This document shows positions 27,450 through 56,418 of a stretch of DNA of 64,000 nt, piece after piece. A program made the position numbers and the translations under genes. Position 1 is the first letter of the stretch, and every line of letters begins with the position of its first letter. The stretch is from Adineta vaga. Its lineage: Eukaryota; Animalia; Rotifera. Below the pieces are notes generated by a model. It saw only the letters and a list, made by a program, of their open reading frames with translations, was not told the DNA's origin and made no database searches. The stretch lies in assembly GCA_021613535.1 (NCBI GenBank), contig CP075494.1, positions 1,240,001 through 1,304,000 of the forward strand. The letters are read 5' to 3'.

Positions 27450-30400
27450 TCACATAAATTCACTGGCAATAATTGTGTTCACTTGTTGCATGACCTCTTT
27501 CAATAACGATGATGTATCTGCTTGGTTCAGTTTTACTCTTTTTACTTGATTTTCCTTTTTATCCTTTTTAAAGATTGTTTCAATATTTCGCAACATCGCT
27601 TGAACATTTGCAGTAAAATCAGATAGTAATAAAAAGAATCCGCGAGTTTTTATTTCTTCTACAAGATTTTCCATTAATGGTACATCTGGTAATCCACCCG
27701 GATAACTATCACCAGCTGTACCGCCACTGCAAAACGGCATATGTCCAGGTGCATCTCCAACCCAAACCAATATTTGTGCAGCTCGTGAACTTTTATCTTT
27801 TGTCCAATTTAATCTCAATGCTTTATTCAAGCCACCTTGAACATCTTCACATTCATCAGCACCCCCACTCGCTTGTTGACTTGCAATTTTTGCTTCAACT
27901 GGTCCAAGATTAGGTGTTTGATGAAAATCGATTACATCAAAACGATTCGAATCTGTATAATCACGATAAGCAACAAATGCCATACGTAGAACACTATCTT
28001 TATCATATTTTTCTTTCATTTCTTTTTGTATTCCATCGGCAATAGCTTTAATATGCTGTTTACATGCTGCAATCCAACTTCCCATTGAACCAGTACAATC
28101 CATAACGAAACAAATTTCAACTGTCAATGGCGAACTATGAACATTACTAGAAAATGTTAAATCAATCGTACGTTTTGCATTTTGTGTAATCGCATCGAAA
28201 TGTGTTTTCATTTCTTGGTTCCAAACTTCATCTGTTGTTGAATATTCTTTCCCATCTTCTCCTGTAAATTTTGTTGTTTTATCTGCATGAAATGAATCAT
28301 ACGGTTTGCTTCCATCACTCTGTTCATTCGACCAATTAACAAGTGCATCACAGAGTAAGCGTGGATTTTGTACAATAATCCAATCATTAAATGCTAACGA
28401 AACACCATTTGATTCAAAACCAACACCAATTCCAATTACTGTAATTGAACGTTGTTCAGCGTAAGCAATAATATTTTGCATGAAACTTCCACGTTTGTCA
28501 TAACCATCGGTAAGAGCAAAAATAAACATTGGTCCATGATTATTATTATATGATGATTGTTGTTGTAATAATTCAGTAGCTGCAAATAATGCGTCACTTA
28601 ATAAAGTTGTTTCACCATCAATTTTCAATGAATTTATGAGATGATGTAGAAATAAACGATCATATTTTTGTTTATAACTTTTTATTAATTCGATTTGTTT
28701 ACCAAATGTTAAAACATTAAAATCTTCGATACCGATTTTATTCAATGCTGCACATATGGAAATTAAAATATCAACTGATGCAAAGTACGTCGGTCCAGTC
28801 ATCGAAACAGATTGATCAAGAAGTAATGCAATACGATATTCGGGTTTTTGCGAACCGATTTGATTTAGATAGATTCGATTGTATTGACCTTGTGTACAAA
28901 TAAATTTTACAATACCTGGTATATATAATCGACTGCCTCGAGTATCTGGTAATGATTGTGTTGGTTTATATGCTGGAAGAATATAATCTTCCAAAGCACG
29001 GACTAATTCACTGATATATTCCTCAAGTTGTTGTTCGATTTGTTGAAGAGTTTTATCTGTTTGTGTTAGTATTGTATCATGTATTTCTAGATTTGAATAA
29101 CTTTTTTCAAGTGCATCAAGTGTTTCATCGAAATTTTTTATAAATTCGTCTGAAGCTAATGTAAAATTCGTATTTATCTGTTGTTGAATAGTTTGTTGTT
29201 CGAGTTTTTGTCGAGCATCATTGACATAGAATTGCCCGGTATAACAAATATCCGGATGTTTCCATAATTCGATATCTTTTACATTGGAGAGAATAAATGG
29301 ATTCATTGGATGAAATTTAATTCCATCATTTGTACTTGATACGGTGGATATTTTTGAAGCATCAACGGGTCGATTTGCATGAAGAACAATCGATTGTTCG
29401 ATCATATGGAAAAGATCATCGACAACTGTTTTTGTTAAACTATCTAATTGTCCAGTTTCAATAAGTCGATTTCGATCAGGTGCTATACGTTTTATGAATT
29501 CGTTCGCTTTTCTCTCATGTTCAATAGCAAATTGTTTATATTCATTTGAAAATTTCGCATCATCTTTTTTCGGTACTTCTGGAATAATACAAACCATATA
29601 AAGTTCGGCTTTGGCAGTACTTAACTGATTCGTGTATAATTCAGTTTCATCCTGAGATGAGATACCATCAGTAATCATGATAATGTATCGTTTAACATTT
29701 GGTTTTACTTGAGTGCCATATAAATCCTTATTCGTAGCAATTTGTTTCAATGCTGTTGCTGGTAAGGTTTTTTCGTCGGTTGTGAATGACTCAAGAATGT
29801 ATTGTCCACGTGCGATGACTGATTGTTGAAGACTTTGAGTAGTGTTTGTTGTTGATACTGTACTATACATTGATTCATGTCCTAGCGGTTTAAGTATTTT
29901 TTGTTCAGCACCAAATCGAACAATGCCGAATTTCCATTCAAGACGATGAAATGTTTCTAGTAGAATCACCAATGTATTTAATGCTTCACGGATCTTTTTT
30001 CCGCCCATACTTCCACTATTATCAACACAGAAAATAAATTCGAACTGTAGATCATCATTGGATGTTGTTTGTTGTTTTCCATATTGCTTTTTTAATGCTG
30101 AACGTAGACGTGTTAATAACATTAGTTGAATATTTCGCGTAAGACGAGCAAGTAAAGCATAACGTGGTCTATCTAATGCTGTTTCTGGTAAATGCTCTGG
30201 ATCACAATGTTCAGTAATAGTTCCAATATCATATTTGTTGGCAGATTGTAGAAGAGTGGAGTACATGTCAGCGGATCGCTTTTGAAATTTCTCTAGTTGC
30301 TGTTTGCTGATACTGACCTTCGTACTTTCTTGTTTTGAAGGTTTTTTGTCTGGTGATGGACTTCCATCTACACTTGGACCGAAGTCCACACGGATAACTC

Positions 30401-33400
30401 CAGGTGATTTATTGTCACCTTTGAATGTTGTTGAGTTTTCTGATCCTTCTTTTCTCACTTTTCCGTCATCGTTAATCTCTAGAACTACATCGCGATTAGC
30501 AGTTGTTGGAAGTTCGATAGTCGGTGTAGAGGGATCTTTGTTGTTTTCTGCATCTTTGTTATTTTCATCGAGAGCTTCATTTAAATCATTATCGTAATTT
30601 GCTAAGAGATTATCGAGTCGAATCCCCAACTGATGTAATATCGGATCACCCATTATTTCACCTTGTTCAAATTTCGAGTCTTCAAATCCTTGTAAGAGCT
30701 GTTTGATATTATCCAAGTTTGTTTGTTGTTGCTGACCTTGCCCCTGATAGTTCAATTCCGCGATGTGACTATCTTCAGGTATATCATAATCAACCGCCAA
30801 GTCATTCTTCTTGCTGAGTTTACACAATTTGCGTAAAGGTTCTGAGTCACTTAATTTATCCAAAACTTGCATTAGATCTCTTTGTATTTCAAGACAATTT
30901 CGTCTGATATGACCATTGACGTCACCTGCGCACGAATCAATGAACTCCAGCGATTGATATAATTGTAACGATGTTTGAATAACTTTCGGTAAAGTTTTTT
31001 TAGCCAAATTGTCAATTTCTCTTCTCATATTGTTTGCTGCCATCTGTTGAAGAGCATTCATGGTTGCTTGAATTTTATTATTAATATTGGCAGCCGTTGT
31101 TAAACATGTGATTGTTTCTGGTAACAATAATTCGTCCTGTTTTATTATATTCGATAATTGTGTTTCTGATTCATTATTTAATTTAGCTGCTTCTGATGCG
31201 AGTGTTTCTACTTTGTCTTTTGCTGCTGCTCTTGCCTCCAAACTTATTTCATTTGTTAATAAGGGGCTCACCGGGACGGCGGATTCATTTGATGTTGCCT
31301 CCATAGATTCAATTGTATCACTAGCTGCAAGACGATGCGCACTTTCACTGTGACTATTATCACTACTGCCCTTGCCCATGCCTGTCGTTGCACTACCTCT
31401 AGTGCCCGCGCTGGTACCTGCATCACCAGTGGAACTTGCACTACTACCGCCACCTTTGTCGGAGCTTGTACTTGCACCGCCACTAGAACTTGCATTACTA
31501 GCACCAACCTTGGGTGTTACTGCACTAGCACTAGCTTCATCCGTGCCTGCACTGGTACTAGTAGAACCTGCAGCGCTGCCTTGACCTGCACTACCAGATT
31601 TTCCACCTGCGCTACCGGAAGAACCTCCTCCGCCACTGCCTTGACCTGCACTGCCAGATTTTCCACCTGCAGAACCACCAGAACCTCCTCCGCCACTGCC
31701 TTGGCCTGCACTACCAGATTTTCCACCTGCGCTACCGGAAGAACCTCCTCCGCCACTGCCTTGACCTGCACTGCCAGATTTTCCACCTGCAGAACCACCA
31801 GAACCTCCTCCGCCACTGCCTTGACCATTACCACTGCCATCTGAACCTCCACTGCCGCCTTTGCCTCTACCAAATAGTTTGAACAAGGAGAACGCTAAAC
31901 CAATGGCGGCTAGCACGAGTCCAACAGGATTTGTGGCGGTTAATAATAAAGCAATACCGGTAATTATATCAATAGCTGTTTTGACAGATTCTGGTAAATC
32001 GGGTACAAGTTCAGTGAGCAATGATAATACAGCTGCTGCTATTGAACTAATTTGTGCTGCCTTCGATGCTATTGTTGTTGCTTTCATTAGAGCTGACGTA
32101 GCTTGTTGGATTTGTTGAACATTTTTGTAGATAGTTTTAGTTTTTTGTACAATGTCCACTACTTCTTTGCTCACACCCATAGTAGTCATTGCAGTATCAA
32201 TAAGATCGAGATACTGATCACCTGACAAGCGCTTTCCATTTATTAATGCTGATAATAACGGTTTGGCGCCATTGATTATTTGTTGTCCTTGTCCACCAAT
32301 GTAGGAACCAGTGACATCCATTATATCCTCATAGCTAATCTTTTGATTATTGAGCTTTTTACGTAATATCGGTATAACTGGTTGAATATGATTGTTTATT
32401 TCTGGCGGAAGGAAACTTGCAGCAACACTTAATGATTGATCTAATATTCTTTGTGGATTATCGGAACGAACTGCATCAATTAAATTAACAACGTCATTCA
32501 CTTTCTTGGCATGTTCTGATGGTAAAAATGATGCACCTAATTTCAATGCACATTTTGTTAGTTCTTCTTTTGCCATATTTTTGTGATCAATTACAATTTG
32601 TAGCTCATGCGCCATACTATAAACATTTTGAATTTCCGGTGGTAAATGTGACCTTAATTTGTCATTATTCAACAGACTATCTAATGCTTGCAAAGGATCA
32701 TTTGTTTGTGATAGTATATTAGCGATTGAATTGGTAATTTCCATAGCAGTATCGATTTTTGTAGTATACTCAGGAAAAAATTCACTAGCAATCGAATGAA
32801 CTGCACCTTGCACATTATGATTTTGTACTTGCTCCATAACATTTCGTGCAGTACATAAAACTTTTGCTGTTTTTGAATCAACAATATTCAACGTTGCATC
32901 AAATGCGCAGTTAAGTAAATTTTCTGCTGTTATCTCTTGTTTCGACAGTTTAGTTAATGATTCCACAACATTATGAGCTTGTTCTGAAACACATGGTACA
33001 AGTCGAAGTGCATCTTTAATCGCATCAATTTCTTGATGATTGACCATCTTCACATAAACATTGCCGATTGTTTCAAAAGTTTCAGACATTGTCTTTGGTG
33101 CCATTATAGATGCCAATTCTAATGTTGTTTTAACAACGTCTTGTATATCACATCTCTCTAATTTACTAGTATGATCGAGAGTATCAAAAATTGCTTGTGC
33201 ACGTTCATTTGGTATCAATTCTAATAGATTTCTCAAAGCTTGTAACTTGTCGGTTTTCAATACAGTCAAAGTGTTAAATGCAATTTGTAAAGTATTTGCT
33301 GTCTCTCGATTATATAACTCAGATACTTGTTTAATTATTTGTTCTTGAGAGATTTTGCCCGACGAGAATTGTTCGATACCAATATTAAATCCAAGTCGAA

Positions 33401-36400
33401 GACGATCAGGAAGTAAAGCGGAAATTGATTTTAATGCTTGTGTTGGTGCAGAAATACCTTGATCGATTATTGTTTTTAAACTAATTTCACTGACATTTGA
33501 TAGTTCATCACTAATTAATTGTTGTGCTAAATCCATCACCGATTGTTTGATATTACCATTAAGTATTTCCGGTGCCGTTGAGAAGATACATTTAACATGT
33601 TCAGATAAATGTTGATCTGGAATGATATCAAATAGATCGATAACAGCATCCATGGTGATATGTTCAGTAGTACTCAATCTATTTAACACAGTTGTAATTG
33701 GTCCCAAAAGTTCTTTTGTAGCTTTATCGGAAATACATTCAACAGTTTGTTCAACTAATTTTGCTACATTTGATCGAGTCAATTCACCATTTATCACTGG
33801 TATTAAATTTTGATAAGATTCAAGTAATGTATTCAGATGATCGAGAGTCTTACGTCCATTGACACCATCATTTAAACGACTAGTTAACTGAATACCTAAT
33901 TCTAAAACTTCTAGTTGTGTCATTGTCACTGTATCGATATTCGAAATGATTTGTATAAACATACTGTTTGCTTTTCGTTGGGTATTTTCAGGATGCATTA
34001 AATCGCATAATTCAGAAACATTCTGCATTAGTCCAAGAATACGACCTTTTGTGACATCGGATACAATCATTGTAAGAGTATCGTGCAATTTTCTATGTTC
34101 ATGTAATGCTAATTGTTCTAATAACGAATTTTCTAATGTTGTAACAAAATTAACCAGTGATTGTGGCGAATAAGGTCTTGATCTAAATGTTGTCATTGTA
34201 TCTTTAATCACCTTAATCCAGGTAATTTGTAATCCTTTCAATCGACGACAATTATATGTAATTGATAAGATTGTTTCGAAGAGATCAAATGGATCTTTTT
34301 GTGTGGTTAATGTTTTCAAATCTATTGATAAACTTCGACAACGATCATTACCGAAATTTAACATTACTGAAATGATATTAATGTAATTGTCTTTGTCACA
34401 AACAGATGTTCGATCTATTAATAAGACAATAGTTAGAATTGTTCGTAATGAATTCACAATTGTTCCATCAATATGTAGACTTAATGCTGAACATAAATCT
34501 TCAACGAATTTCGACCAATCACAGCTCGTATCAGCTAATTTTTTAATACCATTAGTTAAATTTGAAATAAGGCGTTGAAAACTGTGAATATTTTCTTTTT
34601 CATCCGTTTGTAAATCTGATGATAATGAAGCCATAACATACGGTAATGTTGTGATATCTTTTACTGATGGTTGATAATCTTGATGTGAAAATTTTTCACT
34701 TAATTTCATCAGTTCAATTGCATTCTTTGTTTCCTCACAATCATCTAAATGTGTTTGAAGAAAATCTAATACTGAGCTAGCTGAAAGTTCATTTTCTGAA
34801 GCAGAAATTGCTTGTGTAACTAGTTCTGTATTATCTAATGGTACATTGGATTCATATAATTTTTGTAAAACAACTTTTTCATTCACTGGTTCTTCATTTG
34901 CTACTAATTGTAAGATTTGATCGAGAAAATTCACTGAATTTCCATTTGTTGTTGTTCTCATTTCGGATAAAAGATTACAGAATGCTTGTTCCGGACGACC
35001 TTTTTCTTCAATATCCTGTATAAGATTAGCAACTTTATCTGTCAACATTTTCTTTTGTTGTTTTTCTTTGCTTTTTAATTGTGTATTTTGGTTTGAAATT
35101 AGTTCCGTTGTATAATCAAGCAGACGCTTTCTGGCTGTCGAGTCATTAGTATTTCTTTCGAAGGAATGTTTTTCGTATTCCAATAAACGTCCAAGGATTT
35201 GTTCATCGCTATTTCGTGATTGTTCTTCGAAAAGAACCGATAGTTTTTTCGCACATTCCAAAGGTAGTAAAAGATTTTCCGCTTCGCTTCTATGTGGCGA
35301 ACCAACAATAGCGGGTGCCAATTGTTCGTTTAAAATAGTATCGATATTTTTATATAAATCACTCCAATGTTTTCGAGAAAATGAATCGAAAGTTTTCTTA
35401 ACACTTTCTTGAATTTTTTCGGTATACGAAGATATTTCATGTTCATCGGGTTCGAGTCCGGAGAGAATTTCATCACATGTTAAATTATCGGGAATATCGG
35501 AAGGTTTAGGTTCACGATGTATTAATTCATCGAGTTGAGTAACAATCGGAGCGATGGCAGTTGCTGCACGTTGTCGATATTCATGAGTATTATCTTCAAG
35601 TAATTCCATCAGTCGTTTTCCACTTGTTGATTGTGAGATTTGTTGAGATGGCGATGGAAGATCAATTACTAAACTGGATACTTTCGATTCGTCTTTTGGT
35701 TTAACACGACCAGTCACTATTAATTTGTATTTCTTTGATAAACCTGTTCCTGATTGAACTGTTAATGGTACATCAATCTTGAAATCTCCTAATGGTGCAG
35801 TCTTTTTAATCTCGACAATACATTTAATTAATCGTGAATCTAGTTTATTTATTGGAACACTTTTAGTATCACTGCTGATTCTCAAAGAAATGACATCATC
35901 ATTCTCATATGATTCACATTCTAATTGTGCACGTTCATGTCCATCATTTTTCATTGTTATTGAGAATGAATGTTTTGCAAGAGGATTTGTTGTACCACAA
36001 TGTAAAACATTTTGATCAAGAGTTATAATTGGTGCTAAACGTTTACAATGAAATGGAATACGTTGAATTGGTTCTTTACAATTTGTTTTTAGTATAAATT
36101 CGCAATCGAATGAAGGTAATTTCTTTTGAACTTTGTAGACAAAGTTATATTCAATCTTTTGACGAGGTACTATCGAACGTGGGTAGGGGGTTGAATCATC
36201 AATTGACACATGTGATGATGTGGAATGGAATTCATCAAGTAACATTTCAACTAAACCTTTATTGAATAAAACAATCTGACCATTTTCTTCACTTTTATCT
36301 TCTTTTACGCTCAAGATTTTTAATGGTTTTAGTAAATCTTGATCTAATTCGGGCCAACCAGCTGATGTTTTCAATATTAACTTAAATGATGATCGTTGAG

Positions 36401-39400
36401 TCGCACCAGGAAAATTCAAATTAACAAGATTTTCAAGATTAGAATGTGGTTTAATCACTTGTAGTTCGATTTTTAAAATAACCGATGCATTTGGGTCTAA
36501 AATAACTTGACTATGCGATAAACTAGTTATCACTGCGTCTGTTGATGTATTTTCCGCCTTTGATTCCATTGTCATTTTAACTTCACCTGTGTTATATATT
36601 ATCAATTCTTCGTAATGCGTTGTATTAGGAAGACAGGATGGTAATTCAGTACGATATTGTTTGTCTGTTAAATGTATTGATTTATGTACTATGTCATAAG
36701 ATATCTTCCGTATTTTTCCTAAGCAGATGATTCGATATTTGAGATCTTTACTAAAATATATTTCATAAATACATTTCGAATCTTGTATAACATCTTGAGT
36801 ATGCCAATCGATAGTTAATTCTTTGGACTCATAAGCAAATAGATAAAAATCCATTTTGTCGATATCGAATTTACCTGTTGCACCTTTTTCTCGGCGTAAT
36901 TTGACTCGAAGATCGAGCGACATGGGATTTTCAATTGTGAATGAACGAGATTTTTGAGAACGAGGACATGCGAGAACTGTACCAAAATCAACTTCATAAG
37001 TTTTAATTTGATTCGAAGATTGTTCATCCGTGATTTTTGTTTCCATTAATGGTAAATCAATTCCAATAAAAAATTGTTTTATTTCACAACAAAGTTTGAC
37101 CACAATTGATAATCGTTTATTTGCCAATTGTAATTGCCATTCTTCTCGATATTTTCCTTCATTGACTTCACTATTTGGAATTATTTTGAGAATATTCGAA
37201 TCATGTGGTTCAATCGTTGACGATGAATGTTGAATAGTAAAAATGGATAACGAACGTTCTTGTAAAACAGATAAGATTTCGAAATCAATTTCATCATCAG
37301 TATTGTTGATAAGTTCGAGTGCTTTAGTTTTCAATTGTGCATAAGACCAATTTTGAATGATTTGTTCGAATTGAATGATTATTGACGATTGAGAAGGAAA
37401 ATATTCTCCATCTTGTTTATTAATTGTAATTTTATTAGTTGATGGTGAACCGGTTGATTTTAAAAGTGATTTAACATTGACGGCTTTACTGATTTCAGTT
37501 AGATCTGTTAGACGTGCTGGTTGTTGAACTATCGAACGAATTTGTTTTTTTCGTTCATGTATTTGATTTATTGTGTCTTGAATAATTCTTCGACATGAAT
37601 CAATTTGTTTCTCACCAATGAATATATGTTGATCTTTTCCGAGCCAATATTCTTTGATTGTTTCGATTTTATGAAGAGCTTGTTCGGAATGTTCTTTTGT
37701 TTCAAGTGAATAGACAATCAATTGAATAAAATTTAATTGAGTTGAAATCAAAAAGCGATAGATAAATATACCAAAAGTGAATTCTTTTTTAGATAACGCA
37801 TTTGCATCGTGAAGTAATATTTTCATTTGATTTGTGTACAGTTTATCGATTGATTCTCTGGATATTGTACCTTCATTTTCAGATAAATGAATAAGAAAAC
37901 TATTTCGTATTAAATTATCGTAGATATTCTTCAATTGTTCTTCGTATTCTTGACCAGATTGAAGAGTTTTTTGTATTTTGATTGACATATTATGGAGATT
38001 CGAAAGAGTAACTATTAATTTATCGAAATGAAAAGTTTCTTTGAACATTTTTATTCCTTGTTTTAAATCATTAGCAGAATCAAATCGTCGAACAATACCA
38101 TCCTGAATTTTATTTAGTTCATCATCATTAATACTACTATTCAAGTTATCTATTGTTTGAGTTATTATTTTATCTAATTGTTCGTGTTTCGATGGAAATT
38201 GAATAATCAGATAATGATGTGTCGGTGGCGTGGAGACGTTTAGTTTTTGAGTATCGACTCTCATTCCAATTACTGGCAGATCTTCTTTTGCTTCGGGAGG
38301 AGGTATCTCTTTGAGAAGAGGCTCTGGTGGTATCTTTAAGTTATACGATGTTTTACGTTCGATTTCTGAACATTTATATCCGAGATCCATTAGCCATTTT
38401 TCTAAGCTCCTTTTTCTTTCAAAACAATTCAGTTCTTGATATTCTAATCTCAAAGCAAGAGAACGATCTTCGCTTATAACTATTTCTGTTCCTTCAGTTA
38501 TAGTATCGGATCCAATTGTCATTTTAAAAACATCTTCGGCAGGTGTTTGAAACATACCGATATTGATATTTGGGGTAAATTGTACTAAAATGGTTCCTCC
38601 GCCATGATTTCCGAATTTGTAAGATTCTGTTTTTTGATCGTAGAATGGAGATTTGAGAACATTCAAATGTTTACGCGTCATTTTTGTCCACTCATTTTTA
38701 CTATCTTTACCGGCCCAGAGTTCTAAATTCCAAGATTCACGTACTTCAGTTGAACTATCATCGTATGATATGGGTATTGAATGGGAAAATAGGTTGTCTA
38801 CAGCTTTTGAGAAAAGTATATGATTCAGTGGTTTCTTTTTACCTTCAATTTCTTTTGTACCATCTGTTTCTGGAACAAGTCGAATTCGACTATCCCAATC
38901 GTCTACCCATGTTCCTCTAGTATGCTCGGGTCTAATACCTCCATAACGTACTTCTTTAACTTCAATTCGAATTGATTCTATACGAATCATATTCATTAAT
39001 TCTTTGCCTTCTTTATCATCATCGAATCGACATTCTTTCGGAATTGTTTGTTGAATTTTAAGTAATCGTCTTATAAGTTGTATTGTATTATCAAGTAGTT
39101 TATCAGCATTATCAATCTCAAATTTATTTGATGCAAATTTTGATTCATATAAAAGTTGTCCAATAAGTTTGATATCATCAAATATTTCACATAAAAGTTG
39201 TTTTGTACGTTGAATTCTTTCGTGAGCTTGTCGACATTCTAAATCATATTCTTGTTTCTTACGTGTATTTTCTTCTTCAATTGTTTGAACTCGAAATCTA
39301 TATCGATCCATCGCTTTTTCTATCCAAGATTCTTTGATTTTTTTTCGTTGTAATAATAAAAGATCAATTTCTTTTTTCCAATCATCAGTAATCAACTGAA

Positions 39401-45400: not shown

Positions 45401-48400
45401 GTGATAGAGATGATAATTGATTGATTGTGTTATTGACTTGTTGTAATTCAGTCAGACGATATTGTGCGTCAAGAAATGAAGTTCCTTGAGCAAATTCAAT
45501 GATTCGTTTGTAACATTCTGCACTGGTTACATCGAGTAAATTTAATGAATCGTCGATTTTATCAAAGGATAGAATGATTTTATTGGAATACAAATATTGA
45601 TGTGTTTTTGAGAACCATTTTTTTAAATTAAAACTAAATTCAAGTGATTGTTGTGCATCATTGGTTATTAATTTTGATCGAATTAATAATGCTTCTGAAT
45701 AAAGTCCCTCATCCGATTCATTTTCTTGTTTAGTTTTAACTAATGGTTGAATATAATCAAGTAAATTCAAACCATAATCAATAAATTCTTGTTTTTTCCA
45801 TATATCTTCATACATATGAGTCGTGATAATTTTCAAATGAAGATCAATGACACATTCTTCGATGGATGCGATCAATTCATGAAGATTTTGTGCTGGAGCG
45901 TACCAAGTCATTTGTTGTTGTTGATCTTCGATGGTTAAAATTGGTAGAGTAGTAAAAGATGCTTTATTCAATTCTTGATGCAATAAATGTCGGGCCAATT
46001 CCTTAAGTAACAAAGTTTTACCATTATTGTTCAATATAGGATCGAGATAACTTCGAAAGATAGCTGGTTTTATAGCGAATACTGGATCATGTTTATTCGA
46101 AACATAAGTTCGTAAAATACGCGTTGAACGTTTGAGATTTTGATAAGATAATTGATAAGATGTAATAAACTGTAATTCTTTTTCAATGGATAATTTTTTA
46201 GCTGATGTATGTGTTCGTAATAAAGTATGTGCTAGTTCCTGTCCACCGTTAATACCTTGTAATTCTCCTTTGACTATATCAGCTAGATCATGTTGATGAA
46301 TATTTTCAAACGTTAATTTATCATCTAATGGTTGCATTCGAATAATTAAACATCGATTTCGCCAAGCACTGGATAATTTATTCGCCATCTTTCGATTATT
46401 ATTAGCAATAGCAAATAAGCGGAAATCTTTATGTATACCTTTTCCACGACTATACTCCTCTGCTTCTGATGATTCATATAAAGTTAATGTTGGATCAGCT
46501 TCTGCTAAGGAATTCAGACGTTCGATAACATCTCCACGTGCACAGTTAATATTATCGAATAGAATCCACTCTCCACGTTCCATGGCTTGGATTAATGGTC
46601 CTTTATTAAAAGTAAATGTTAATCCTTCGCCAAGATTTTTCACTAATTTAAATTCATCTTCAACTTGATCAAGTCTATCTAAATATTTTTCTATTTCTTC
46701 TGCAATCGTTTGTCCATGAACTTCATTCGAGTGTTTCAATTCATGTTCGAAAAATGAACGGCATTGTTGAAAAGCATCCTGAGCTTGATCAGAATTTTCT
46801 ACAAAAGAAAAGACAGGTACATTGAAAAAAGGCTTTGATCGCAATAGAAAACATGAAAAACCTATATTTACCGTGTTCCCATTGATGAATTAAACGTGTA
46901 ATTGTTCGAATGAGTTGTTCAACTTCATAGAATTTCTGTGATAATGGTATGAGAACTGCTAATGCAAAACGAACAATATCATTGAGTAATTGTTGACTAT
47001 TTTGTTTTCGTCGTTTTTCATATGATTGTTTATTAATTACTGTCCATGAGCCAAGCAAATCGGAAGTTGTCGTTTCGTGATTTAAATTTAACACAAGTAA
47101 TCGTCGTCCACATAATCGAGCTAATTCACAAACAAGTGCTGTTTTACCTGAACAATCCCCACCTTCGATTAAAACAGTTGCTTTACTAACTGTTGCTGCT
47201 GCTAATAATTGTAATTTTTCTAATGTTCGTTTACTATGAATTAAAGGTCGATAAACTGATTGATATTCTTTTTTCTCAATATAGACAAATCCAAGACGGA
47301 CATAACCTTGCAAATTTAAATCACTATCAATAAGTTCTGCTTGGTTCTGAACTATTGTACTAATTGGATTTGTATCCAATGCAAATTTTTGTTGAATCAG
47401 ATCACGAACTAAACTTTGATCTTGAATATTTTCGAATCGAGAAGCATAAACAATGTCAAGATAAACTCGTAAACTACGAATGATATTCTGTTCTTCAATT
47501 CGACGTAGATTTTCGTCATCCACCTGATTTGTTGTTGTTATTTCTTCTGAAAGATTCATATGCGCACGATGTGTAAGAGAAAGCGCACCAATTAATTTCG
47601 ATAATTTCTCAATATCACGAAGATTAAAATCATATGGTCCACCAAGTCGTCCAATCTGTCGTAATCGAGCCTTTTCGCTGATTTCGAAATGAAATTCATT
47701 GATTTTTTCCACTAAATTTTCTGTTAAATAACCCGCGATCAAATGATCATACAATAATTTGATGGTAATATGCATTAATTCACGTGCTTCGAATGTTGAT
47801 AATTGAACTTGAATAAAATGTGCTTGAGTCGATCGTGGTAACTTCTCTCGTCCACCACCAATCGATGCTGGATTCATTGCCGCCACAATAATTGATCCGT
47901 CAATCGGAATGGATTTCGCTAATGCTGGGATAAATAATTGACTTTCATTGGCAAACAATGGCATCAATTGATTTAATAATTCTTTACGTGCTAAGTTCAA
48001 TTCATCAAGTAGAATAACCGTATTTCGACGATTTTTCTTCAATGAAGTGCATAATGGACCTTCTTGAAATTCAAATACTCGTTGACCATTAACAACACGT
48101 GGTACAAATGAACCAATAAGATCTTCAAATGTTGTATTACTACTGAAATTAATGCGAACAACTTCGTAACCTAACATTTTAGCTAAAACTTCGATAATTT
48201 TTGTTTTTCCAACACCCGGCGGACCAGCAAGTATTTGTCGATTGGATGAATGTAATGAAAATATAATTCGTGAGATATTATCTAATACTGATTTTGTTAA
48301 AGCAAGAGAAAAACGAAGATTCTCAGGTCGTGACTGTATTTTTGGTGCAAATGGTGCAATTAAATTATTTGATTTCAATCTTAAACCCCAATGTACTCGT

Positions 48401-51400
48401 GATTGTTTTGTTTCGGGATCGATTATTGTCATATCTTCCACTGAACACCATTGACTTAAATCGTCATAAACATTGACTTTTTCAGGATTTCCATCCGTCG
48501 AATCTTTTTCATCCGTCGAAAGAAAATTCTTTTCGCATTTAAATGCGTTCAAGACTTTTTGCCATATTGTATTCGATGAATCAATATTTGAATTCGTGAG
48601 GTTTTTTGGTTCAATAACACTATCAAGAAATAAAAATTTTACACAAATAGCAGCCGCTTGTTTGATGGGCATGTGTTCACCATGTAAACCTAAACATTCA
48701 CCAAATCGAACAAAATGACGTGAATCTAACGAATCAATTTTCATTGTTTGAGCAAGTTGTGACGCAAGATTATCACCTAAAATATCTATAATTTGAGTGA
48801 TTTCATTTTCTTTACATTTGTCTGATGATGTATTCATTGCTGATTTGATTGCTAATTGTTTCAATTCAACGTTATCATAGGATTGAACACGTATTTCTGT
48901 CATTCTTGAACGCGTGGCTGCACTTAATTGTAAACGATTTTCGGTTTTTTCATCAGTATGTACCGTAGCAAATACTTGAAATGTTGGTAAAATCGGAAAT
49001 TTAGCACGTTGTGGATTGATTTTGGTTGTTTTTGATTCTTGAGCAGTAAAATCTTCATAGAGAACAAATGATGGTTCAGTTTCGAATAAACTATTTAAAC
49101 GTTCAATCACAGCTTGAGATGGTTCGTTAATATCTTCTAACACTAAGATTTTACCCTCTTTGACAGCACTTGTAACAGGGCCATCTTGGAATAAGAAGAG
49201 ATTCGATTTACCTTGTTGAATTGCTCGTTCAATCTCAATAATTATACTTTCACAACGAACTTTAATTAGTAAAATACCATTTTCATTCGATCCAATGCGA
49301 CATATATCATCGAGACTAGACTTAATTATATCTAGTCGATTTTGAATTGATTGAAATGCATCAGCAATAGGATTAGTTTGCATTCCTGATGAAGAAGTCA
49401 AAGAATGTGACGTTGATTGACTATCAAATTCTTCTTCACTAAAAAATTCTAAAACTCTTAGATCAGCTAGCAATTGTGATGATTGTTGTGTACTAAATGG
49501 ATCAACTTCTTCCTCTTCTTCGTCTAATTTCGCTGAAATTTTTTCAGGGGCAGTACTGAAAGGATCAATTTCTTCTTCTTGTTCTTCATCGTCATTGACA
49601 GTGTTGTGAGGCATTGAAAATGGATCATCTTCATCTTGATCATTAGCCATCATATCAAAAACTTGTTTCGTATGATAGACTTTTTCAAAATATTCTTCAT
49701 CATTATCATCGCTACTAGTTGGGCGATTCTGTGTACTGCTCAATTGCTCTGCTATTGTTGTGGATTTCGGAGGTAAACTAGGTATTGGTAGAGCTGCGTA
49801 ATCATCCATTTTACTTGATTCGAGATCAACTTTGATATCTTCAGTTAGAACAATTGAGTCAGATGGTTGTTCGGTAAGTTTTGCTGTTGGATGTTGTCGA
49901 ACGGCTCTTTTCCCTGATTGTTTTTTTATTTCAGTAATAAATATATCAACTTCAACCACTAATGCATCACAATTTGTGCGAAATTCAGTAAAATTTCTAA
50001 ACTCTGCTGGAGTAGCACTTTTTGATAGATTCTTTTTCACACGTTCATACAATTGATTCAAACAGTTCAATAATAAACTCAACGCATCAGCATGTGTATA
50101 AGGTCTAAAATAAAAAATAGAGAAAATATCTGCATATTGAACAATTTACTGAATCTACCTGATCGATCCGATAAGATCATTTGTTTCGGTTGATGTTGAA
50201 CAATTAATTACGCAAAGTTCAGATTCTTTTGTCATTAATTTCGACCAGATTTTGATCAATTCAGATTTATAACAAGTTGGTCCTAATAAAAGAATTGGTT
50301 CATGTTGTTCAGCAGCAGCAAAGACGCGCCAAAGACCTAGTAACAAATTTTGTGATGCTGATGCTAATTGTAAATGAATAGCTGCATCGAAATTGGTAAA
50401 TGTATATGACACTGGTAAACGAGGTGGTCGATTCAAGGATATTTGATTTCCTTCGATTTTAACAGAAGATGATGAATCGATTAAATGTGGAAATGAAGTT
50501 TGAAGGCATGTAATAAATACATTATTGAGTTTTTTCGGTACACGTGATTCTAATAACCTCAATGCATGTTCATCCCAATCAACATCAGTTTTTCGTTGTT
50601 TTCGATTGATCCATTTAATGACTTCACGCATTGTTAAACCGAGTTTCGGTGCACCTAAGATTGGCTGTTGTTTCTCATCGATTTGTCGATTTAGATTTGT
50701 AACCGTTGATGCTATTTGTGGTGCAACTTTTTTCAAATCATCATAGAATGTTGCTGATGATTTCGATACAGTTGATGTTGATTTACGTTGAATAATGATA
50801 AATTTCAATTCGTTTTCCGTGAAAGAATGAAATTGTATTTCTAAAAATCTTGAACGTAATGTTTTGGGTAATTGTTTTCGTCCGACATAGCTTGTACCAT
50901 TTTGTGTTGCAAAAAAACGAAATCCATCACGCGCAACTAATGTCTGACCCGTATTTGGTACGGTAAGATATTTTTGTCCTTCTAAAATCGGATACAAAAC
51001 ATTCATTACAGCCGGTTCAGCTAAATCAAATTCATCAGCAACAAACCAATCACCATCAAGCATAGCACGTGATAATGCGCCATTTAAAAATTCACCATTT
51101 GGCATGTACGAACCAAAATAATCTTGAACAGTTGTGCCTTTTGTGTTATTAACTCGATAGAGAACTTTATGATCACATTGTGCTAAATATTCGATTAAAC
51201 TTGTTTTACCCGTGGCAGCAGGACCTTCGAGAAGTACAGGACGTGAACAAATAACAGATGCACATAGACGTTTAGCTGCATCGTAACGTGTTGGTGTTTT
51301 CTCAGGATCAATAATATGTTCACGATGCTTTTCACGTGCTGTTTCGGAAACTGAAAAACTGAAGAAATTAATAGAACCATGTTGGGCTTCTTTTTCTAAA

Positions 51401-54400
51401 TATGATTTAACAGATGATGTTGATGATTTTTTTGAATCATTATTGAACACAAGTTCATAAGCGGAAAGTAAAACTGATGGTAAATCAATTTTTCGTTCGA
51501 GTACAACTTTTGAATGTTGTAATTTAAATGCACAATCAATAAATTGAACTAATTGTCTAGGTGTTAATTGTTCTGAATGAAGTTTTTCACAAATTGAATC
51601 GATAAGTTGTTTTTCATTAGTTGAAAAATACGAGGTAAACATATTTTTATAAACGTTTAATGATGATAAATTCAAACCTTGATAAAAAATAATTAAAAAT
51701 CGATTATATAATGCTGGTGAAAGTTCATGATTAGTTTCAATTGAAGCATTTTGTAATCGACCAGTTGGCGGAGCCATCGTGGCAATAATACGAAAATTTG
51801 GATGAACTGGTACAGGTTGTGTCTCGTTATTTTCTACTTTAACCCATTGAGCTGGTTGTTCAAGAACAGGATTTAAGCGTTCAAGAACAGCAGATGATGC
51901 TTCGGAAAAATTTTCAAGAATCAGCCAATGGCCTTTACTAATCGCCTCACTTACTGCGCCATCGTGCCAACTTGGTAATTTTGGATGTGGTACGAGAGAA
52001 CCGACAAGAGCTGTAGGTTCAGTTTGTGGTGTTAAATATAGATGTTGACATCGAACATTTGTTAGTGTAGCGATAGATTTAACAAGATGACTTTTACCAC
52101 AACCTTCTGGTCCAACAATAAGAATGGGTTGTGAAGGTGATGCAGCTAAAATAAATTGTGCAATACGACTAGCTTCGTCATCAAGATAAAATGATGATTG
52201 AGTAGATGATAGTGACGATTGATATTCTGAAATGGAGGTTTCCGGTTCACCAAATTCTGCTGAAATGTATTTAACAATTTCTTTTCGTTGTTTTTCATTT
52301 CGACATAAACTTGTATAAGTTTCGACAACTATTGCTACTAGAGTCGAACTTTCTCGAGATCGTCGTCCTATCATTGACCAATATAATGTATAAGAACAAT
52401 CGTAAATTTGTGTGAGATGTTCATTATGAAAATATTGAAAAATATAATTATGAATTTTAATCATTTTTGAAAGTTCCGAATTACTTAATTTTATCAAATC
52501 TGATGGCCAATCGTTCAGAACACGATCGAGATGAACTATTGGCATTTGTAATAATAAACGTTGTTGAGATAGAAATGCAACCGCATTATTATTTGGACGA
52601 TATTCAATCGATAATTTTGATGATTGTGTTGTATTGACATGAAAAAGATTTTCAATAATTCGTGCAATTTGTCCTCGACTTTGTTCTTCACGAAATCGTA
52701 AACCATAAATAGCATATGCTTGTTCAGTGAGAATTCCATTGAATATGTTTGAAGGAAGTTTAGTAATTGTTTGTGAACATTTAATTAACATTTTTTCATA
52801 ATCACATAAACTTTGACACCAACGAAAAAGTTCACGTATAGTTATTTCCGAATAATTTCTATTTCGTTCTTTAAAATCAGTTTCTTTAATTATATTCATA
52901 ATTTTTAAATGTAAATCAACCATTTGTGCTGCTTGAGTTACAAAAGGAAATTTCTCGGTTTTTAATTTATTTGTGACAATATCAACTAGTTCATCATCTT
53001 TTGGACCTTCGACAATAAAAATACTAAAACGACTTAATAGAGCTGTTGATTGTGTATCACGTGCGTCCTTATATTTGCCTGCAGACGGATTTTGTGTTGC
53101 AAAAAGACGGAATTCTCGATGGATTTGATAGATACGACAGTTTTGTTTCACTTGATTTTGTTGATCTTTAGCATCATTCTCATCTTCAATATTCGGAATT
53201 GTCAATACACCGGATTCTAGCGCTTGTTCAATTGCTTGGAGAACATTTGGTGGTGCTAAATTCATTTCATCCAATAAAAGCCAATGTCCATGACGGTACG
53301 CCGTAGTAAATGGGCCTTCTTCATATTCTAATTCAATTTCTTGTTGTTGACTATTTCCACTTTTGACTATTTTCAATTTAACTGAACCAAATAATCCACC
53401 AATATCGGTTTTGGATGAAAGATTAAAACGAATCAATGGTTTTTGAAGGTCAGCAGCCACATCAAGTATCAGGCTACTTTTACCAACTCCTGTTTCACCT
53501 TGTAATAACAAATGAATGGGTGTTCGTATACATTCGACAATACGTTGACGATTACTGCGCATTGTATTTGTTTGCACTAACGATGGTAATTGATGACGAT
53601 TTGGTATTAAATGACGAAATTCTTCTGGACATTCACTAATTAAAGTTTTTATTGCATCGAAATCTGCTGTGTTCGTGTTTGAAGCTTCTTCCAAATGTGT
53701 CAATGCTTGCAAATGTTTTGATAATAAAGCAAAATCCGATTGTTTGATTGTACGAAAAGGTATTTGAAATTTCGAACGTTTCTTTTCGCGTTCTAAAAGA
53801 TATACTGGTGTCGTATGCATATGTGCAACTGTTCTTTGTTGATCATTAACTATATTCAACGATGGATCTGCTATTAAATTCACCTGTTCATCAGTTGAAT
53901 CTTGTAAACTTTGTAGAAGTTTTATAAGATCATTTGGTTGCATATTCAATGCTCGACCTACTAAATGTGCAACGGATACACGTATATGAGCATTTTTATG
54001 TAATAAACATTGAATACAAGTAGGCAAACATTGTTCAATATATGTTGAAAGAAAACTGAATGTAGATAATGAGATGAAATTTCTTGCATAATCAAATTTT
54101 TCATGTAAGAATTGAATAATTTCATAAGTATGCATACCAAAAAGTTCCATTAAAGTTGATAGTTTAAAATGAAATGTTGATGATTGTTCATCATTCGATG
54201 GAATATCATTTGTTAATAACGTCAATATTAATAATTGTTCAAACCAATATTTAATTAAAATTTGTTGTTTTGATCGAAGTACAAAATTGAATAATCGTAA
54301 CGTTTGTTTATAATTAACAGAACATATTATCGTTGATTGAATAATTCGTTTTATATCATCAGTATTCATAATGAATGTTTGTATGTTTATTTGATCGATT

Positions 54401-56418
54401 AGGTGAAGAACAATCGATGTTGTAGATACTAAAATATATTGACGAGTTGTGAAATTCCAAAGAAATTTTTCATTTGAAAATACCAAATGAAGAATATTAA
54501 TAATCGGTTGAATTGTTGTTGAAATATTTAACTTTTTCGGATTTAATTGTCCATCAAATACTTTTTCTAAGAGAAAGAGAAGTTCAGAGAGAAGCAATGG
54601 ATGTTCAGTTGTAGTTAATTTGATTACTGAAAGTAAAAGATCGAAAGTTGATATTACTTTCCAATTATTAAACGCATATAAACGAGCATCTTTTAATAAT
54701 TCATGAAGATTTTCTTGTACATGTTTATTTTTCATTTGTTGATCAATGATTTCTAATAAAACTTTAATCCAATCTTTTTTACAATTATTAATTATAAATT
54801 TTAAAACTAGAAATGAGTTTTCTATTGTTGATCGAAATAATCGTGTAAATAATGATGTTGGAATTTGTCGACAAAATTCAATAAAATTTGAATTTGTCTT
54901 TAGTATTGTTGATATCAATTGTTCTCGATTAAAATTCATTAAATTAGCAAAAAATTGTAACCAATGATCTGTTGTTTGCGTTAAGTTCACAGCTAACATT
55001 GTCAATAATGAGCATAAATCATCAATAGACCATTTCGATGATGGTTGCAAACATTCGTCTAATAAATTTTCTTTTATTGAATATTTTTCATGATTAATCA
55101 TTGATTCAAGAATTTTTTCAAGAATTAAACATGATATTAACGGAGGAAGATTTTCATCGATTGACATGGGTAGTTCATTGACAAATGTTGTAAGAAGTTT
55201 GCCACCCGTATTTCGTATTTGTTCATCTTCATTGGTTAACAAATAGATGAAAAAATCCTTTATATCATCATTTGATGTTGAATTCTCCAAATACGTTGTG
55301 AATGTTTGATAAATTGTTTGTAATAATAAACTCCAAAGTTTTTTTGTTTCTGGATCATCATTGTTTTCTTCTTGGTCAAATGCATATCGAAGTAATTTCG
55401 ATATTGGTAATAAAAATGATGGTCGCGGATGGATTGTATTAGTTGAATAGATGAATGTTTTACCATCGGTCCATAGAACTCGACATTCATTTTGAATAAA
55501 TTGAAATTCACCAATGCTTGAACCGGGTAAATAATCAAATTTATTCAACATTTGATTTTTAATTGATGTTAGTTCAGTTTGAGCTTGTACATTACTTGCA
55601 TCTGTTAATCGAATGTCTACGATTCGTTGACGCTGAACAGCAAATGATAACATTGATGATAAACATTGATCTGCATTCAAAAATGCTTGAAGAATTAATT
55701 GACAACGAAATAATTGGTTTAAAATGTTTTCAAGAGCGACTAATTCATCGGCATTGGTGTCTTGATTTTGACTGGCTTTTTCAATAAATAAATCGAATTG
55801 ATTGGTGATATCAATTGGATATTTGGTGTTATCACACAAAACGGCGCAACCTGGTGAGTCGGGAGTGAATGGAAATTGTTTGTCAGATACGAAACGTATT
55901 TTATTTGTTGTTGGATTTTGATTCATTGGTTTTCCAAGCCACATTTCGATGGTCCATTTATCAATTCGAGTAAGAATTGAATTTGCTCGATAAACATTTG
56001 TACGCGAAATAAAGACGGCAATGGAAAATAGAAAATTTTCATTGTTCAACACTGACGAATGTGTTAATATTAATTCGAATAGTTGAAAAAAATGCAATGA
56101 AAATTTAGCATGTACTGAATAGAAACGATAACATGGAATAATTAATGTGGCCGTAATTAAAGAAACGAGCGATTCGCCATCGTCGCTTTCTCTCTCATGA
56201 TGAATTCTATCTTTCAAGTATTTGAATGCCTTGAAAATGTTTTCATCACTCTCGATTGCATCACCCATATATTTTCGTAAGCGATCTAATGATTGCCGAA
56301 TGAGTGAAGGGTTCATATCTGTCAATGATCGAGCGAATGAAGAACTCATTTCGCGAATGACAGCATTTGAAGAAGCACTAGCATTTGTGCTCTTTGCAGA
56401 GCGCGCAGCTTGTGCCAT
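27450..56418 (-). CDS. Giant midasin-related AAA+ ATPase with Ig-like domains, hydrophobic hairpin, Gly/Ser repeats and three vWA domains (~9,550 aa)
   Basis: Four long ORFs joined by GT-AG introns 50158-50105 and 46871-46799 (both frame-restoring) and an ambiguous junction at ~41230-41048. Six Walker A motifs (GETGVGKS, GPEGCGKS, GPAATGKT, GPTCYKS, GPPGVGKT, GGDCSGKT) with matching Walker B segments and FRxFATxN motifs. MIDAS motifs DNSGS, DQSVS, DCTGS. Confidence 0.85.
31576..31826 (-). repeat. Coding 60-bp tandem repeat (~4 units, ABAB pattern) encoding GQGSGGGGSxGSAGGKSGSA
   Basis: Lines 31621 and 31741 are identical; the alternate units share CTACCA...GCTACCGGAA variants. Confidence 0.95.

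What the first reader, a model, noticed from the sequence alone, without database searches (positions are those of the whole stretch)
27450..56418. ~9,550-aa midasin-derived giant with a non-midasin tail: candidate new AAA+ effector machine
Seen: N-terminal helical region, six AAA modules (long inserts in the 4th and 6th), long helical linker, Ig-like array, helical region, hydrophobic hairpin, Gly/Ser tether and three vWA domains, with only 2-3 introns in 29 kb. Known: canonical midasin/Rea1 is ~5,000-5,600 aa with one terminal MIDAS and works in 60S maturation. Inference: a repurposed paralog that grips substrates by vWA and pulls or inserts into membranes, perhaps in defence, by analogy to giant AAA proteins such as RNF213. 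Intron poverty raises possible HGT.
Basis: partly seen in the sequence, partly recalled or inferred. Interest (0 to 1): 0.85.

Follow-up and report, generated by a model that had tools for sequence, protein, structure and literature searches.

The report
Giant midasin-like AAA+ protein gene
This is one real, about 9,600-residue gene of the rotifer Adineta vaga, belonging to an old, widespread and unstudied eukaryotic family that joins a midasin-type ATPase ring to three metal-dependent binding domains; it was most likely inherited from animal ancestors, not acquired from another organism.

Summary
Window 27450-56418 (minus strand) is one gene of Adineta vaga: 3 exons, 2 short GT-AG introns, about 9,613 aa.

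- **Third "junction".** It is not an intron. Window 41029-41205 carries a stop and frameshifts and resembles a paralog. Contigs of four laid runs do not carry the window's letters there; the one contig that spans the gap holds a different 186 nt of in-frame length, and orthologs are continuous.
- **Layout.** HEAT-like N-terminus; six midasin-type AAA modules (1, 3 and 5 keep Walker A and B; 2, 4 and 6 are degenerate); long helical region; ASH/HYDIN Ig-like array; helical repeats; hydrophobic hairpin; Gly/Ser repeat; three VWA domains. MIDAS residues are invariant in 32 of 32 relatives.
- **Not the canonical midasin.** A separate intron-rich MDN1 lies on contig 4. Two more giant paralogs lie on contig 3.
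- **Distribution.** Relatives of 6,000-7,700 aa occur in a sponge, a cnidarian, another rotifer, choanoflagellates, green algae, a cryptophyte, a chlorarachniophyte and a syndinian.
- **Descent.** The tail groups with sponge and cnidarian proteins, so horizontal transfer is not supported.
- **Function.** Inferred only: a midasin-style grip-and-pull remodeller. Membrane insertion and defence are unproven.

First readers of this scan noted a similar ~8,500-aa gene elsewhere in this genome (s1-505400).

The parts
27450..56418 (-). Whole gene: 3 exons, 2 introns, about 9,613 aa, including the stop at 27450-27452
50159..56418 (-). Exon 1 (6260 nt). The start ATG is at 56418, the same start as the A. 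steineri ortholog P0006
50105..50158 (-). Intron 1, 54 nt, GT..AG, lying inside AAA4
   Evidence: The frame is restored, and P0007 starts at this position
46872..50104 (-). Exon 2 (3233 nt)
46799..46871 (-). Intron 2, 73 nt, GT..AG, lying inside AAA6
   Evidence: P0006 and P0007 are continuous across it
27450..46798 (-). Exon 3, about 19.3 kb with no intron
41029..41205 (-). Anomalous 177-nt patch with a TAA stop and frameshifts. It is 89% identical over 229 nt to paralog G000:C3:9309057-9309294, with deletions of 1, 1 and 7 nt. No contig of the four laid runs carries it; the one spanning contig holds 186 other letters, a length that keeps the frame
53599..56418 (-). N-terminal helical, HEAT-like region of about 940 aa
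   Evidence: Weak HEAT_2. The feature search is nearest PSME4/MMS19 solenoids, which is a lead only
52609..53586 (-). AAA1, with Walker A GETGVGKS and Walker B DE intact
51319..52206 (-). AAA2, with Walker A intact and Walker B reading EN
50539..51321 (-). AAA3, with Walker A and B intact. It is the best match to Mdn1 AAA3
48403..50361 (-). AAA4, degenerate (GPTCYKS; ED), split by intron 1 and by an insert of about 290 aa
49393..49785 (-). Acidic insert with three DPF motifs, conserved in orthologs and in paralog C3b
47263..48315 (-). AAA5, with Walker A and B intact. It matches Mdn1 AAA5
45855..47250 (-). AAA6, with Walker A present and Walker B reading DN, an insert and intron 2. It matches Rea1 AAA6
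37437..45854 (-). Long post-ring region with no detectable similarity to the Rea1 linker.
35697..37379 (-). ASH/HYDIN/Cep192-type Ig-like array: at least 3 units by Pfam, and a beta-rich stretch of about 560 aa
   Evidence: Relatives carry PF22544 and PF22067
32022..35696 (-). Helical region. Its last ~350 aa (window 32022-33089) were modelled and fold as about 20 helices, with repeated 'LPP' motifs
31869..31967 (-). Hydrophobic helix-NP-helix hairpin
31287..31868 (-). Gly/Ser 20-aa repeat x4 followed by a Ser/Ala/Thr-rich tether
29562..30035 (-). VWA1, with a DxSxS MIDAS motif present
28287..28829 (-). VWA2, MIDAS-like. D, S, S, T/S and D are invariant in 32 of 32 relatives. It is the VWA that matches the MDN1 MIDAS
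27687..28115 (-). VWA3 (VWA_4 type), with DxTGS, GGxDxPED and DAPxH nearly invariant

Best explanation
Shown: one three-exon gene of Adineta vaga encodes a protein of about 9,613 aa from an ancient, uncharacterised eukaryotic family related to midasin. The protein reads, in order: a HEAT-like N-terminus; six AAA_5 modules in one chain, of which at least AAA3-AAA6 correspond position by position to those of MDN1; about 4,700 aa of fast-evolving helical scaffold holding an ASH/HYDIN Ig-like array; a conserved hydrophobic helical hairpin; a disordered Gly/Ser tether; and three VWA domains. The MIDAS residues of VWA2 and VWA3 are invariant across the family. The genome has a separate canonical MDN1, so this gene is not the pre-60S factor. 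Inferred: it works like midasin, as a grip-and-pull remodeller. AAA1, AAA3 and AAA5 keep Walker A and B and would hydrolyse ATP, while AAA2, AAA4 and AAA6 would be regulatory. Ring and linker movement would be passed to ligands held by the MIDAS sites of the tethered triple-VWA 'hand'. All parts are probably cytosolic: there is no signal peptide, the hairpin puts both flanks on the same side, and the positive charges follow it. The substrate is unknown. The DPF motifs in the AAA4 insert, the ASH domains and the hairpin point loosely to membrane-trafficking or ciliary/centrosomal surfaces. The lineage was inherited vertically in animals and duplicated in bdelloids. The few remaining introns all lie in the 5' third, which fits loss through reverse-transcribed copies.
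For: One gene: GT..AG introns restore the frame. A. steineri P0006 spans ORF1-4 and the 7,456-aa P0007 spans ORF2-4. An in-frame-length 186 nt replaces the window's broken patch in the one spanning contig, and the contig ends read open in the flanking frames. Orthologs are continuous there. Midasin-type ring: the only strong PDB hits are Mdn1/Rea1 (E 4e-102, 1e-71, 4e-38) against 5e-13 for NorQ. Module best hits to the A. vaga MDN1 locus are collinear for AAA3-6. Separate MDN1: the C4 locus has many exons and its linker exon hits the Rea1 linker at 9e-23, whereas our post-ring 1,581 aa gives no PDB hit at E<=1. Family and descent: relatives with ring, Ig and VWA tail occur in Monosiga, Salpingoeca, Clytia, Corticium, Brachionus, Bryopsis, Mesostigma, Chlorarachnion, Rhodomonas and Amoebophrya. 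The Ig, hairpin and VWA landmarks are collinear. In the tail tree this gene sits with sponge and cnidarian proteins. Functional constraint: MIDAS residues are invariant 32/32, the Walker motif pattern is as stated, and the DPF motifs are conserved.
Against: No experiment or expression data bears on function. The laid 'RNA?' runs are only guessed to be RNA, and none crossed an intron. The middle ~5,000 aa has almost no detectable similarity outside rotifers, so force transmission like that of the Rea1 linker is pure analogy. The Ig-region model was poor (pLDDT 40). The hairpin is only borderline hydrophobic and is not hydrophobic in the sister paralog. The DPF cluster is confined to one rotifer clade, possibly also Bryopsis. 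The tree rests on one region, a quick search and a long outgroup branch. Only one canonical MDN1 was available for module comparison, and AAA1-2 were not resolved.
Confidence: 0.6

Rival explanations
1. A membrane-anchored or membrane-inserting effector, possibly in defence. The hairpin enters a bilayer and the ring pulls on VWA-bound targets at a membrane.
For: The hydrophobic helix-NP-helix followed by a Gly-rich stretch is conserved in orthologs and in a distant 7,148-aa relative, P0054. Approximate insertion energies for the arms are near zero. Relatives carry an OTU domain and a weak RING, recalling RNF213. A rotifer family member is polymorphic for an LTR insertion (PMC7943196).
Against: The arms are short and only borderline hydrophobic. 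The homologous segment in paralog C3b and in P0007 carries charges. Fold searches gave no match above the noise level for helical bundles. No immune-type domain was found in this protein. There are no expression data.
Confidence: 0.15
2. A horizontally acquired gene, from a protist, alga or bacterium, as for many intron-poor bdelloid genes.
For: There are only 2 introns in 28.8 kb, and paralog C3a is an 8,272-aa single open frame. The distribution is patchy. Metagenome relatives were called as single ORFs. The neighbourhood is rich in transposon remains.
Against: The best non-bdelloid tail matches are a sponge protein and an unnamed one (387 bits each). The clade with Corticium and Clytia has SH-aLRT 90. 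The composition matches the surrounding genome. Choanoflagellates also carry the family. The remaining introns lie in the 5' third, as expected for cDNA-mediated intron loss.
Confidence: 0.1
3. The window copy is a broken allele or pseudogene, or two genes as annotated (I4U23_022252 begins just after the patch).
For: The window shows a TAA stop and frameshifts at 41029-41205. The public annotation starts a 4,487-aa protein downstream of it.
Against: The 2013 DNA contig X6 (depth 60.9) holds 186 other letters in place of the patch, a length that keeps the frame, and is otherwise identical to the window over 5.7 kb. The contig ends of X1-X3 read open in the flanking frames. No laid contig carries the window's patch. 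Open frames of 1,880 and 4,528 codons flank it. Orthologs are continuous there.
Confidence: 0.07
4. A ubiquitin-system machine of the RNF213 type: the ring positions a ligase or deubiquitinase activity on VWA-bound substrates.
For: P0054 has an OTU domain above the Pfam cut-off, and Monosiga has a weak RING in the middle region.
Against: No OTU, RING or RZ domain was detected in this protein at E<=1. These domains look like lineage-specific insertions. A separate RNF213-like gene lies on contig 6.
Confidence: 0.08

Closest known systems
Midasin (MDN1/Rea1/Mdn1), PDB 6or5, 6hyd, 6i26
   Same: Six AAA_5 modules in one chain, with module order matching for AAA3-6; midasin AAA-lid domains; a C-terminal MIDAS-type VWA with intact metal-site residues.
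   Different: About twice the length. The post-ring region has no detectable similarity to the Rea1 linker. There is no D/E-rich stretch before the MIDAS (the acidic stretch sits inside AAA4). It has three VWA domains instead of one, plus an Ig-like array, a hydrophobic hairpin and a Gly/Ser tether. The genome keeps a separate canonical MDN1.
Unnamed giant 'VWFA domain-containing proteins' (e.g. Monosiga XP_001742639.1, Bryopsis GMH42204.1, Clytia 5,491 aa, Corticium XP_062502325.1), and the 7,479-aa midasin-like gene of Rotaria magnacalcarata mentioned in PMC7943196
   Same: The same family: a ring about 30-36% identical, Ig-like domains and a tail with VWA1 then VWA2-VWA3, all in the same order.
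   Different: The middle region is lineage-specific. Some relatives carry an OTU or RING domain. The DPF cluster and the long Gly/Ser repeat are features of this rotifer clade.
RNF213 (mysterin)
   Same: A giant cytosolic protein with a dynein/midasin-like AAA core and extra effector domains.
   Different: This protein has no RING or RZ finger and RNF213 has no VWA. An RNF213-like gene exists separately at G000:C6.
Bacterial MoxR-VWA pairs (RavA-ViaA, NorQ-NorD, CbbQ-CbbO)
   Same: An AAA_5 ATPase coupled to a MIDAS-containing VWA partner that holds the substrate.
   Different: Those are separate small proteins forming homohexamers. Here six modules and three VWA domains sit in one chain.

Membership tests
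Canonical midasin (MDN1/Rea1) | Six AAA_5 modules in one chain, most similar to midasin | tested here: met
   PDB hits are to Mdn1/Rea1 only at strong E-values. Module best hits are collinear for AAA3-6.
Canonical midasin (MDN1/Rea1) | Rea1-type linker after the ring | tested here: not met
   ORF3 aa 300-1880 gave no PDB hit at E<=1. The C4 MDN1 exon hits Rea1 3068-3497 at about 1e-22.
Canonical midasin (MDN1/Rea1) | D/E-rich region followed by a single terminal MIDAS domain | tested here: not met
   There are three VWA domains. The maximum D+E content in the tail ORF is 0.20, and the acidic stretch lies in AAA4.
Canonical midasin (MDN1/Rea1) | It is the genome's only midasin ortholog | tested here: not met
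   A separate intron-rich MDN1 lies at G000:C4:13.97 Mb.
Giant midasin-like AAA-Ig-triple-VWA family (unnamed) | Ring, HYDIN/ASH Ig and a VWA1 then VWA2-VWA3 tail in the same order, with sequence similarity in ring and tail | tested here: met
Giant midasin-like AAA-Ig-triple-VWA family (unnamed) | Invariant MIDAS residues in VWA2 and VWA3 | tested here: met
   32 of 32 sequences
RNF213 | RING and RZ-type zinc fingers | tested here: not met
   None was found by Pfam. An RZ finger is present in a different gene on contig 6.
VWA8 | About 1,900 aa, an AAA_5 ring and one VWA | not tested
The size and the three VWA domains differ.
Bdelloid horizontally acquired genes | Nearest relatives are non-animal | tested here: not met
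   The nearest named relatives are a sponge and a cnidarian protein.
Integral membrane hairpin proteins | Two hydrophobic arms sufficient for bilayer insertion, conserved across the family | tested here: inconclusive
Fold matches are below noise.

The most novel reading that the evidence does not exclude
This family is a further lineage of single-chain AAA+ ring machines, beside dynein and midasin, old enough to span animals, choanoflagellates, green algae and SAR protists but lost from the standard model organisms. It would work at membranes or ciliary/centrosomal surfaces rather than on ribosomes: held by a helical hairpin, recruited through adaptor-binding DPF motifs and ASH domains, and pulling on partners gripped by three MIDAS sites.
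Probability: 0.25. Interest if true: 0.85.

Novelty: new variant of a known kind. Interest (0 to 1): 0.62.

Why it matters
Midasin is usually treated as a single-copy ribosome-assembly factor. This gene shows that the same six-module ring and MIDAS design was kept in a second, much larger protein family across distant eukaryotes, including early-branching animals. No paper found in the searched library describes that family. It offers a natural test of how a midasin-type ring can be coupled to other substrates. The alternating pattern of intact and degenerate ATP sites, and the triple MIDAS tail, are concrete features to test. Tractable hosts are available (Clytia, choanoflagellates, Brachionus). 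The finding also corrects the public annotation, which splits the gene at a stretch that sequencing contigs do not support.

Tried and rejected
- **Ig-like region model.** AlphaFold on ORF4 aa 1201-2000 with 7 sequences gave pLDDT 40. It was used only for secondary structure.
- **Helical and hairpin model.** The model reached pLDDT 75. Foldseek against the PDB found nothing at E<=0.001. VIA-align's best matches were small three-helix membrane subunits at Z 9, below the stated noise level for helical bundles. I treat both results as no match.
- **ESM Atlas feature searches.** The hairpin region gave nothing usable. The N-terminus gave generic HEAT solenoids, which I treat as a lead only.
- **Profile searches of the middle region.** HMMs of 400-aa blocks against distant relatives were blank except for the Ig and hairpin blocks.
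- **Splicing evidence.** The laid contigs do not cover intron 2, and it is not certain the runs are RNA.
- **C6 locus.** The AAA_lid_7 locus on contig 6 is not a further paralog. It has no tblastn match and looks RNF213-like.
- **Environmental relative.** The contig context was checked for a bacterial or viral origin. The neighbours (ART, kinase-TIR, LRR) do not settle it.
- **Literature.** Searches for the family, its accessions and 'midasin-like' found only a passing mention in PMC7943196.
- **Exon handling.** All database searches were run exon by exon, by reference. In one local script, the halves of AAA4 and AAA6 that straddle introns were placed together for a tblastn against this genome's own MDN1 locus.
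Full report
**Source and gene model**

The window is Adineta vaga, G000:C5:1240001-1304000. A public protein, I4U23_022252, is 99-100% identical to the last ORF. Four long minus-strand ORFs fill 27450-56418. At the local base composition about 7.8% of random codons are stops, so frames of 2,087 and 4,528 codons cannot arise by chance.

- Junction 1 is a 54-nt GT..AG intron at 50158-50105.
- Junction 2 is a 73-nt GT..AG intron at 46871-46799.
- Both restore the downstream frame.
- Exons of 6,260, 3,233 and 19,346 nt give 9,613 codons.

**The third junction is not an intron**

Window 41029-41205 contains a TAA stop and frame shifts, but it still reads as homologous coding sequence in shifted frames. 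I laid contigs of four public runs on 40960-46950.

- A 2013 DNA contig (X6) is identical to the window over 5.7 kb, but holds 186 other letters in place of these 177. That length keeps the frame.
- Three 2024 runs (RNA by guess only) end at both edges with the same kind of different letters. Those letters read open and resemble the orthologs.
- The window's patch is 89% identical over 229 nt to the matching place of the contig-3 paralog, with deletions of 1, 1 and 7 nt. The two genes are otherwise only about 37-47% identical in protein here.

The patch is therefore either an ectopic conversion tract in one allele or an assembly chimera. It explains why the public annotation starts a 4,487-aa protein just downstream.

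Ortholog models confirm continuity. A. steineri P0006 covers ORF1 through the start of ORF4. The 7,456-aa P0007 covers ORF2 to the stop, with about 60 residues where the patch lies.

**Anatomy**

- **AAA modules.** Pfam finds AAA_5 and the midasin AAA lid in ORF1-3.
  - Walker A is canonical in AAA1, 2, 3, 5 and 6.
  - AAA4 reads GPTCYKS.
  - Walker B is DE in AAA1, 3 and 5, but EN, ED and DN in AAA2, 4 and 6. Intact and degenerate sites therefore alternate.
- **Inserts.** AAA4 is split by intron 1 and by an acidic insert of about 290 aa. The insert carries three DPF motifs, conserved in orthologs and in the contig-3 paralog. AAA6 has a shorter insert and intron 2.
- **N-terminus.** The first 940 aa look like a HEAT-type solenoid. 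This rests on weak Pfam and a feature search, and is a lead only.
- **Ig-like array.** After about 2,800 aa with no family match come ASH, HYDIN and Cep192-type Ig-like units. HYDIN passes the Pfam cut-off when the segment is scanned alone. The region is beta-rich over about 560 aa.
- **Helical repeats and hairpin.** About 20 modelled helices (pLDDT 75) close the helical region that follows the Ig array and lead into a helix-NP-helix hydrophobic hairpin at ORF4 aa 3024-3056.
- **Tether.** A 20-aa Gly/Ser unit is repeated four times, followed by a Ser/Ala/Thr-rich stretch.
- **VWA domains.** There are three. VWA1 and VWA2 carry DxSxS. VWA3 carries DxTGS, GGxDxPED and DAPxH. In 32 relatives the metal-site residues of VWA2 and VWA3 are invariant or nearly so.

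**Relation to midasin**

- The only strong PDB matches of ORF1, ORF2 and ORF3 are Mdn1/Rea1 (E 4e-102, 1e-71, 4e-38). NorQ follows at 5e-13, and no dynein chain appears among the matches listed at E<=0.001.
- Against this genome's own MDN1 locus, the modules that lie in order along that gene are best matched by our AAA3, AAA4, AAA5 and AAA6 in turn. AAA1 and AAA2 were not resolved.
- That MDN1 lies at G000:C4:13.97 Mb and has many exons. One exon matches the Rea1 linker at about 1e-22.
- The 1,581 aa after our ring give no PDB match at E<=1.
- VWA2 is the domain that matches the MIDAS region at the end of the C4 MDN1 gene.

The gene is therefore a paralog that shares the ring-plus-MIDAS plan. 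It is not the ribosome-assembly ortholog.

**Paralogs and family**

- Contig 3 holds a full-length collinear paralog (29-69% identity).
- Contig 3 also holds a more distant one: a single open frame of 8,272 codons.
- A full HMMER search with the tail found 98 representatives at E<=1e-30, including proteins of 6,400-7,400 aa.
- Named sources are Monosiga, Salpingoeca, Clytia, Corticium, Brachionus, Bryopsis (two copies), Mesostigma, Chlorarachnion, Rhodomonas and Amoebophrya, plus many metagenome contigs.
- These proteins match our ring at about 30-36% identity and our tail in the same order.
- Profile searches recover the Ig block in Bryopsis and the hairpin block in a 7,148-aa relative, again in order.
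- Several relatives carry HYDIN or Cep192 Ig domains. One has an OTU domain, and Monosiga has a weak RING.

**Descent**

A tree of the VWA2-VWA3 region gives the following (33 rows, 519 columns, quick search).

- This gene groups with Rotaria, next to the contig-3 paralog plus P0007.
- All of these sit inside a group with Corticium and Clytia (SH-aLRT 90).
- The 8,272-codon paralog and Brachionus fall in a second group with algae and protists (SH-aLRT 99).

The best non-bdelloid scores belong to the sponge protein and an unnamed one. This fits vertical descent in animals with an old duplication, and argues against recent transfer.

Intron poverty is real: 2 introns here, against at least a dozen in the shorter MDN1. 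Both introns lie in the 5' third, the pattern expected from intron loss through cDNA copies (inference).

**Function (inferred)**

By analogy with midasin and with MoxR-VWA pairs (PMC7159879, PMC3495828), the ring would drive movement that is passed to partners held at MIDAS sites.

- The lack of a signal peptide and the positive charges after the hairpin favour a wholly cytosolic protein.
- ASH domains and DPF motifs, which I know as belonging to cytosolic proteins, point the same way.
- The hairpin is conserved in orthologs and in one distant relative.
- Fold searches gave nothing above noise.
- DPF motifs are known adaptor-appendage ligands (my own knowledge). Here they are a lead confined to this rotifer clade.
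- Nothing tested bears on defence.

**Literature**

The only mention found is a 7,479-residue gene of 'unknown function with partial similarity to midasin', interrupted by an LTR element in Rotaria magnacalcarata (PMC7943196). Searches for the accessions found nothing.

**Method notes**

- Searches were run exon by exon, by reference.
- One local script placed the intron-split halves of two AAA modules together for comparison with this genome's own MDN1 locus.

Noticed in passing
window 41029-41205 and G000:C3:9309057-9309294: A short tract about 89% identical in DNA is shared by two paralogs that are otherwise only about 40% identical in protein, with three small deletions in the window copy. 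It is either an ectopic gene-conversion tract or an assembly chimera. It splits the public gene model.
   Followed up: partly
G000:C6:6301134-6315346 (L018, L019): A large multi-exon gene with AAA, a midasin-type AAA lid and an RZ-type zinc finger. It looks like an RNF213-like gene and is unrelated to the family studied here.
   Followed up: partly
G000:C3:2805247-2830062 (L010-L013): A single open frame of 8,272 codons encodes a more conservative paralog of the same family. It groups with Brachionus and protist or algal copies rather than with the window gene.
   Followed up: partly
window 25562-26053, 60885-62048 and 5324-5908: Transposon remains flank the gene: a Mutator-like transposase fragment just past its 3' end, a retrotransposon gag with a zinc knuckle upstream, and an endonuclease/exonuclease/phosphatase ORF.
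   Followed up: partly
window 16078-16599: A dual-specificity phosphatase domain ORF, apparently an ordinary host gene.
   Followed up: no
L020 (JGI metagenome contig, 162.9 kb): An environmental family member lies next to genes for an ART-type ADP-ribosyltransferase, a kinase-TIR protein and an LRR protein. The organism is unknown.
   Followed up: no
P0054 aa ~3065-3168; P0150 aa ~5880: An OTU deubiquitinase domain sits in one 7,148-aa relative, and a weak RING finger in the Monosiga protein, both inside the variable middle region.
   Followed up: no
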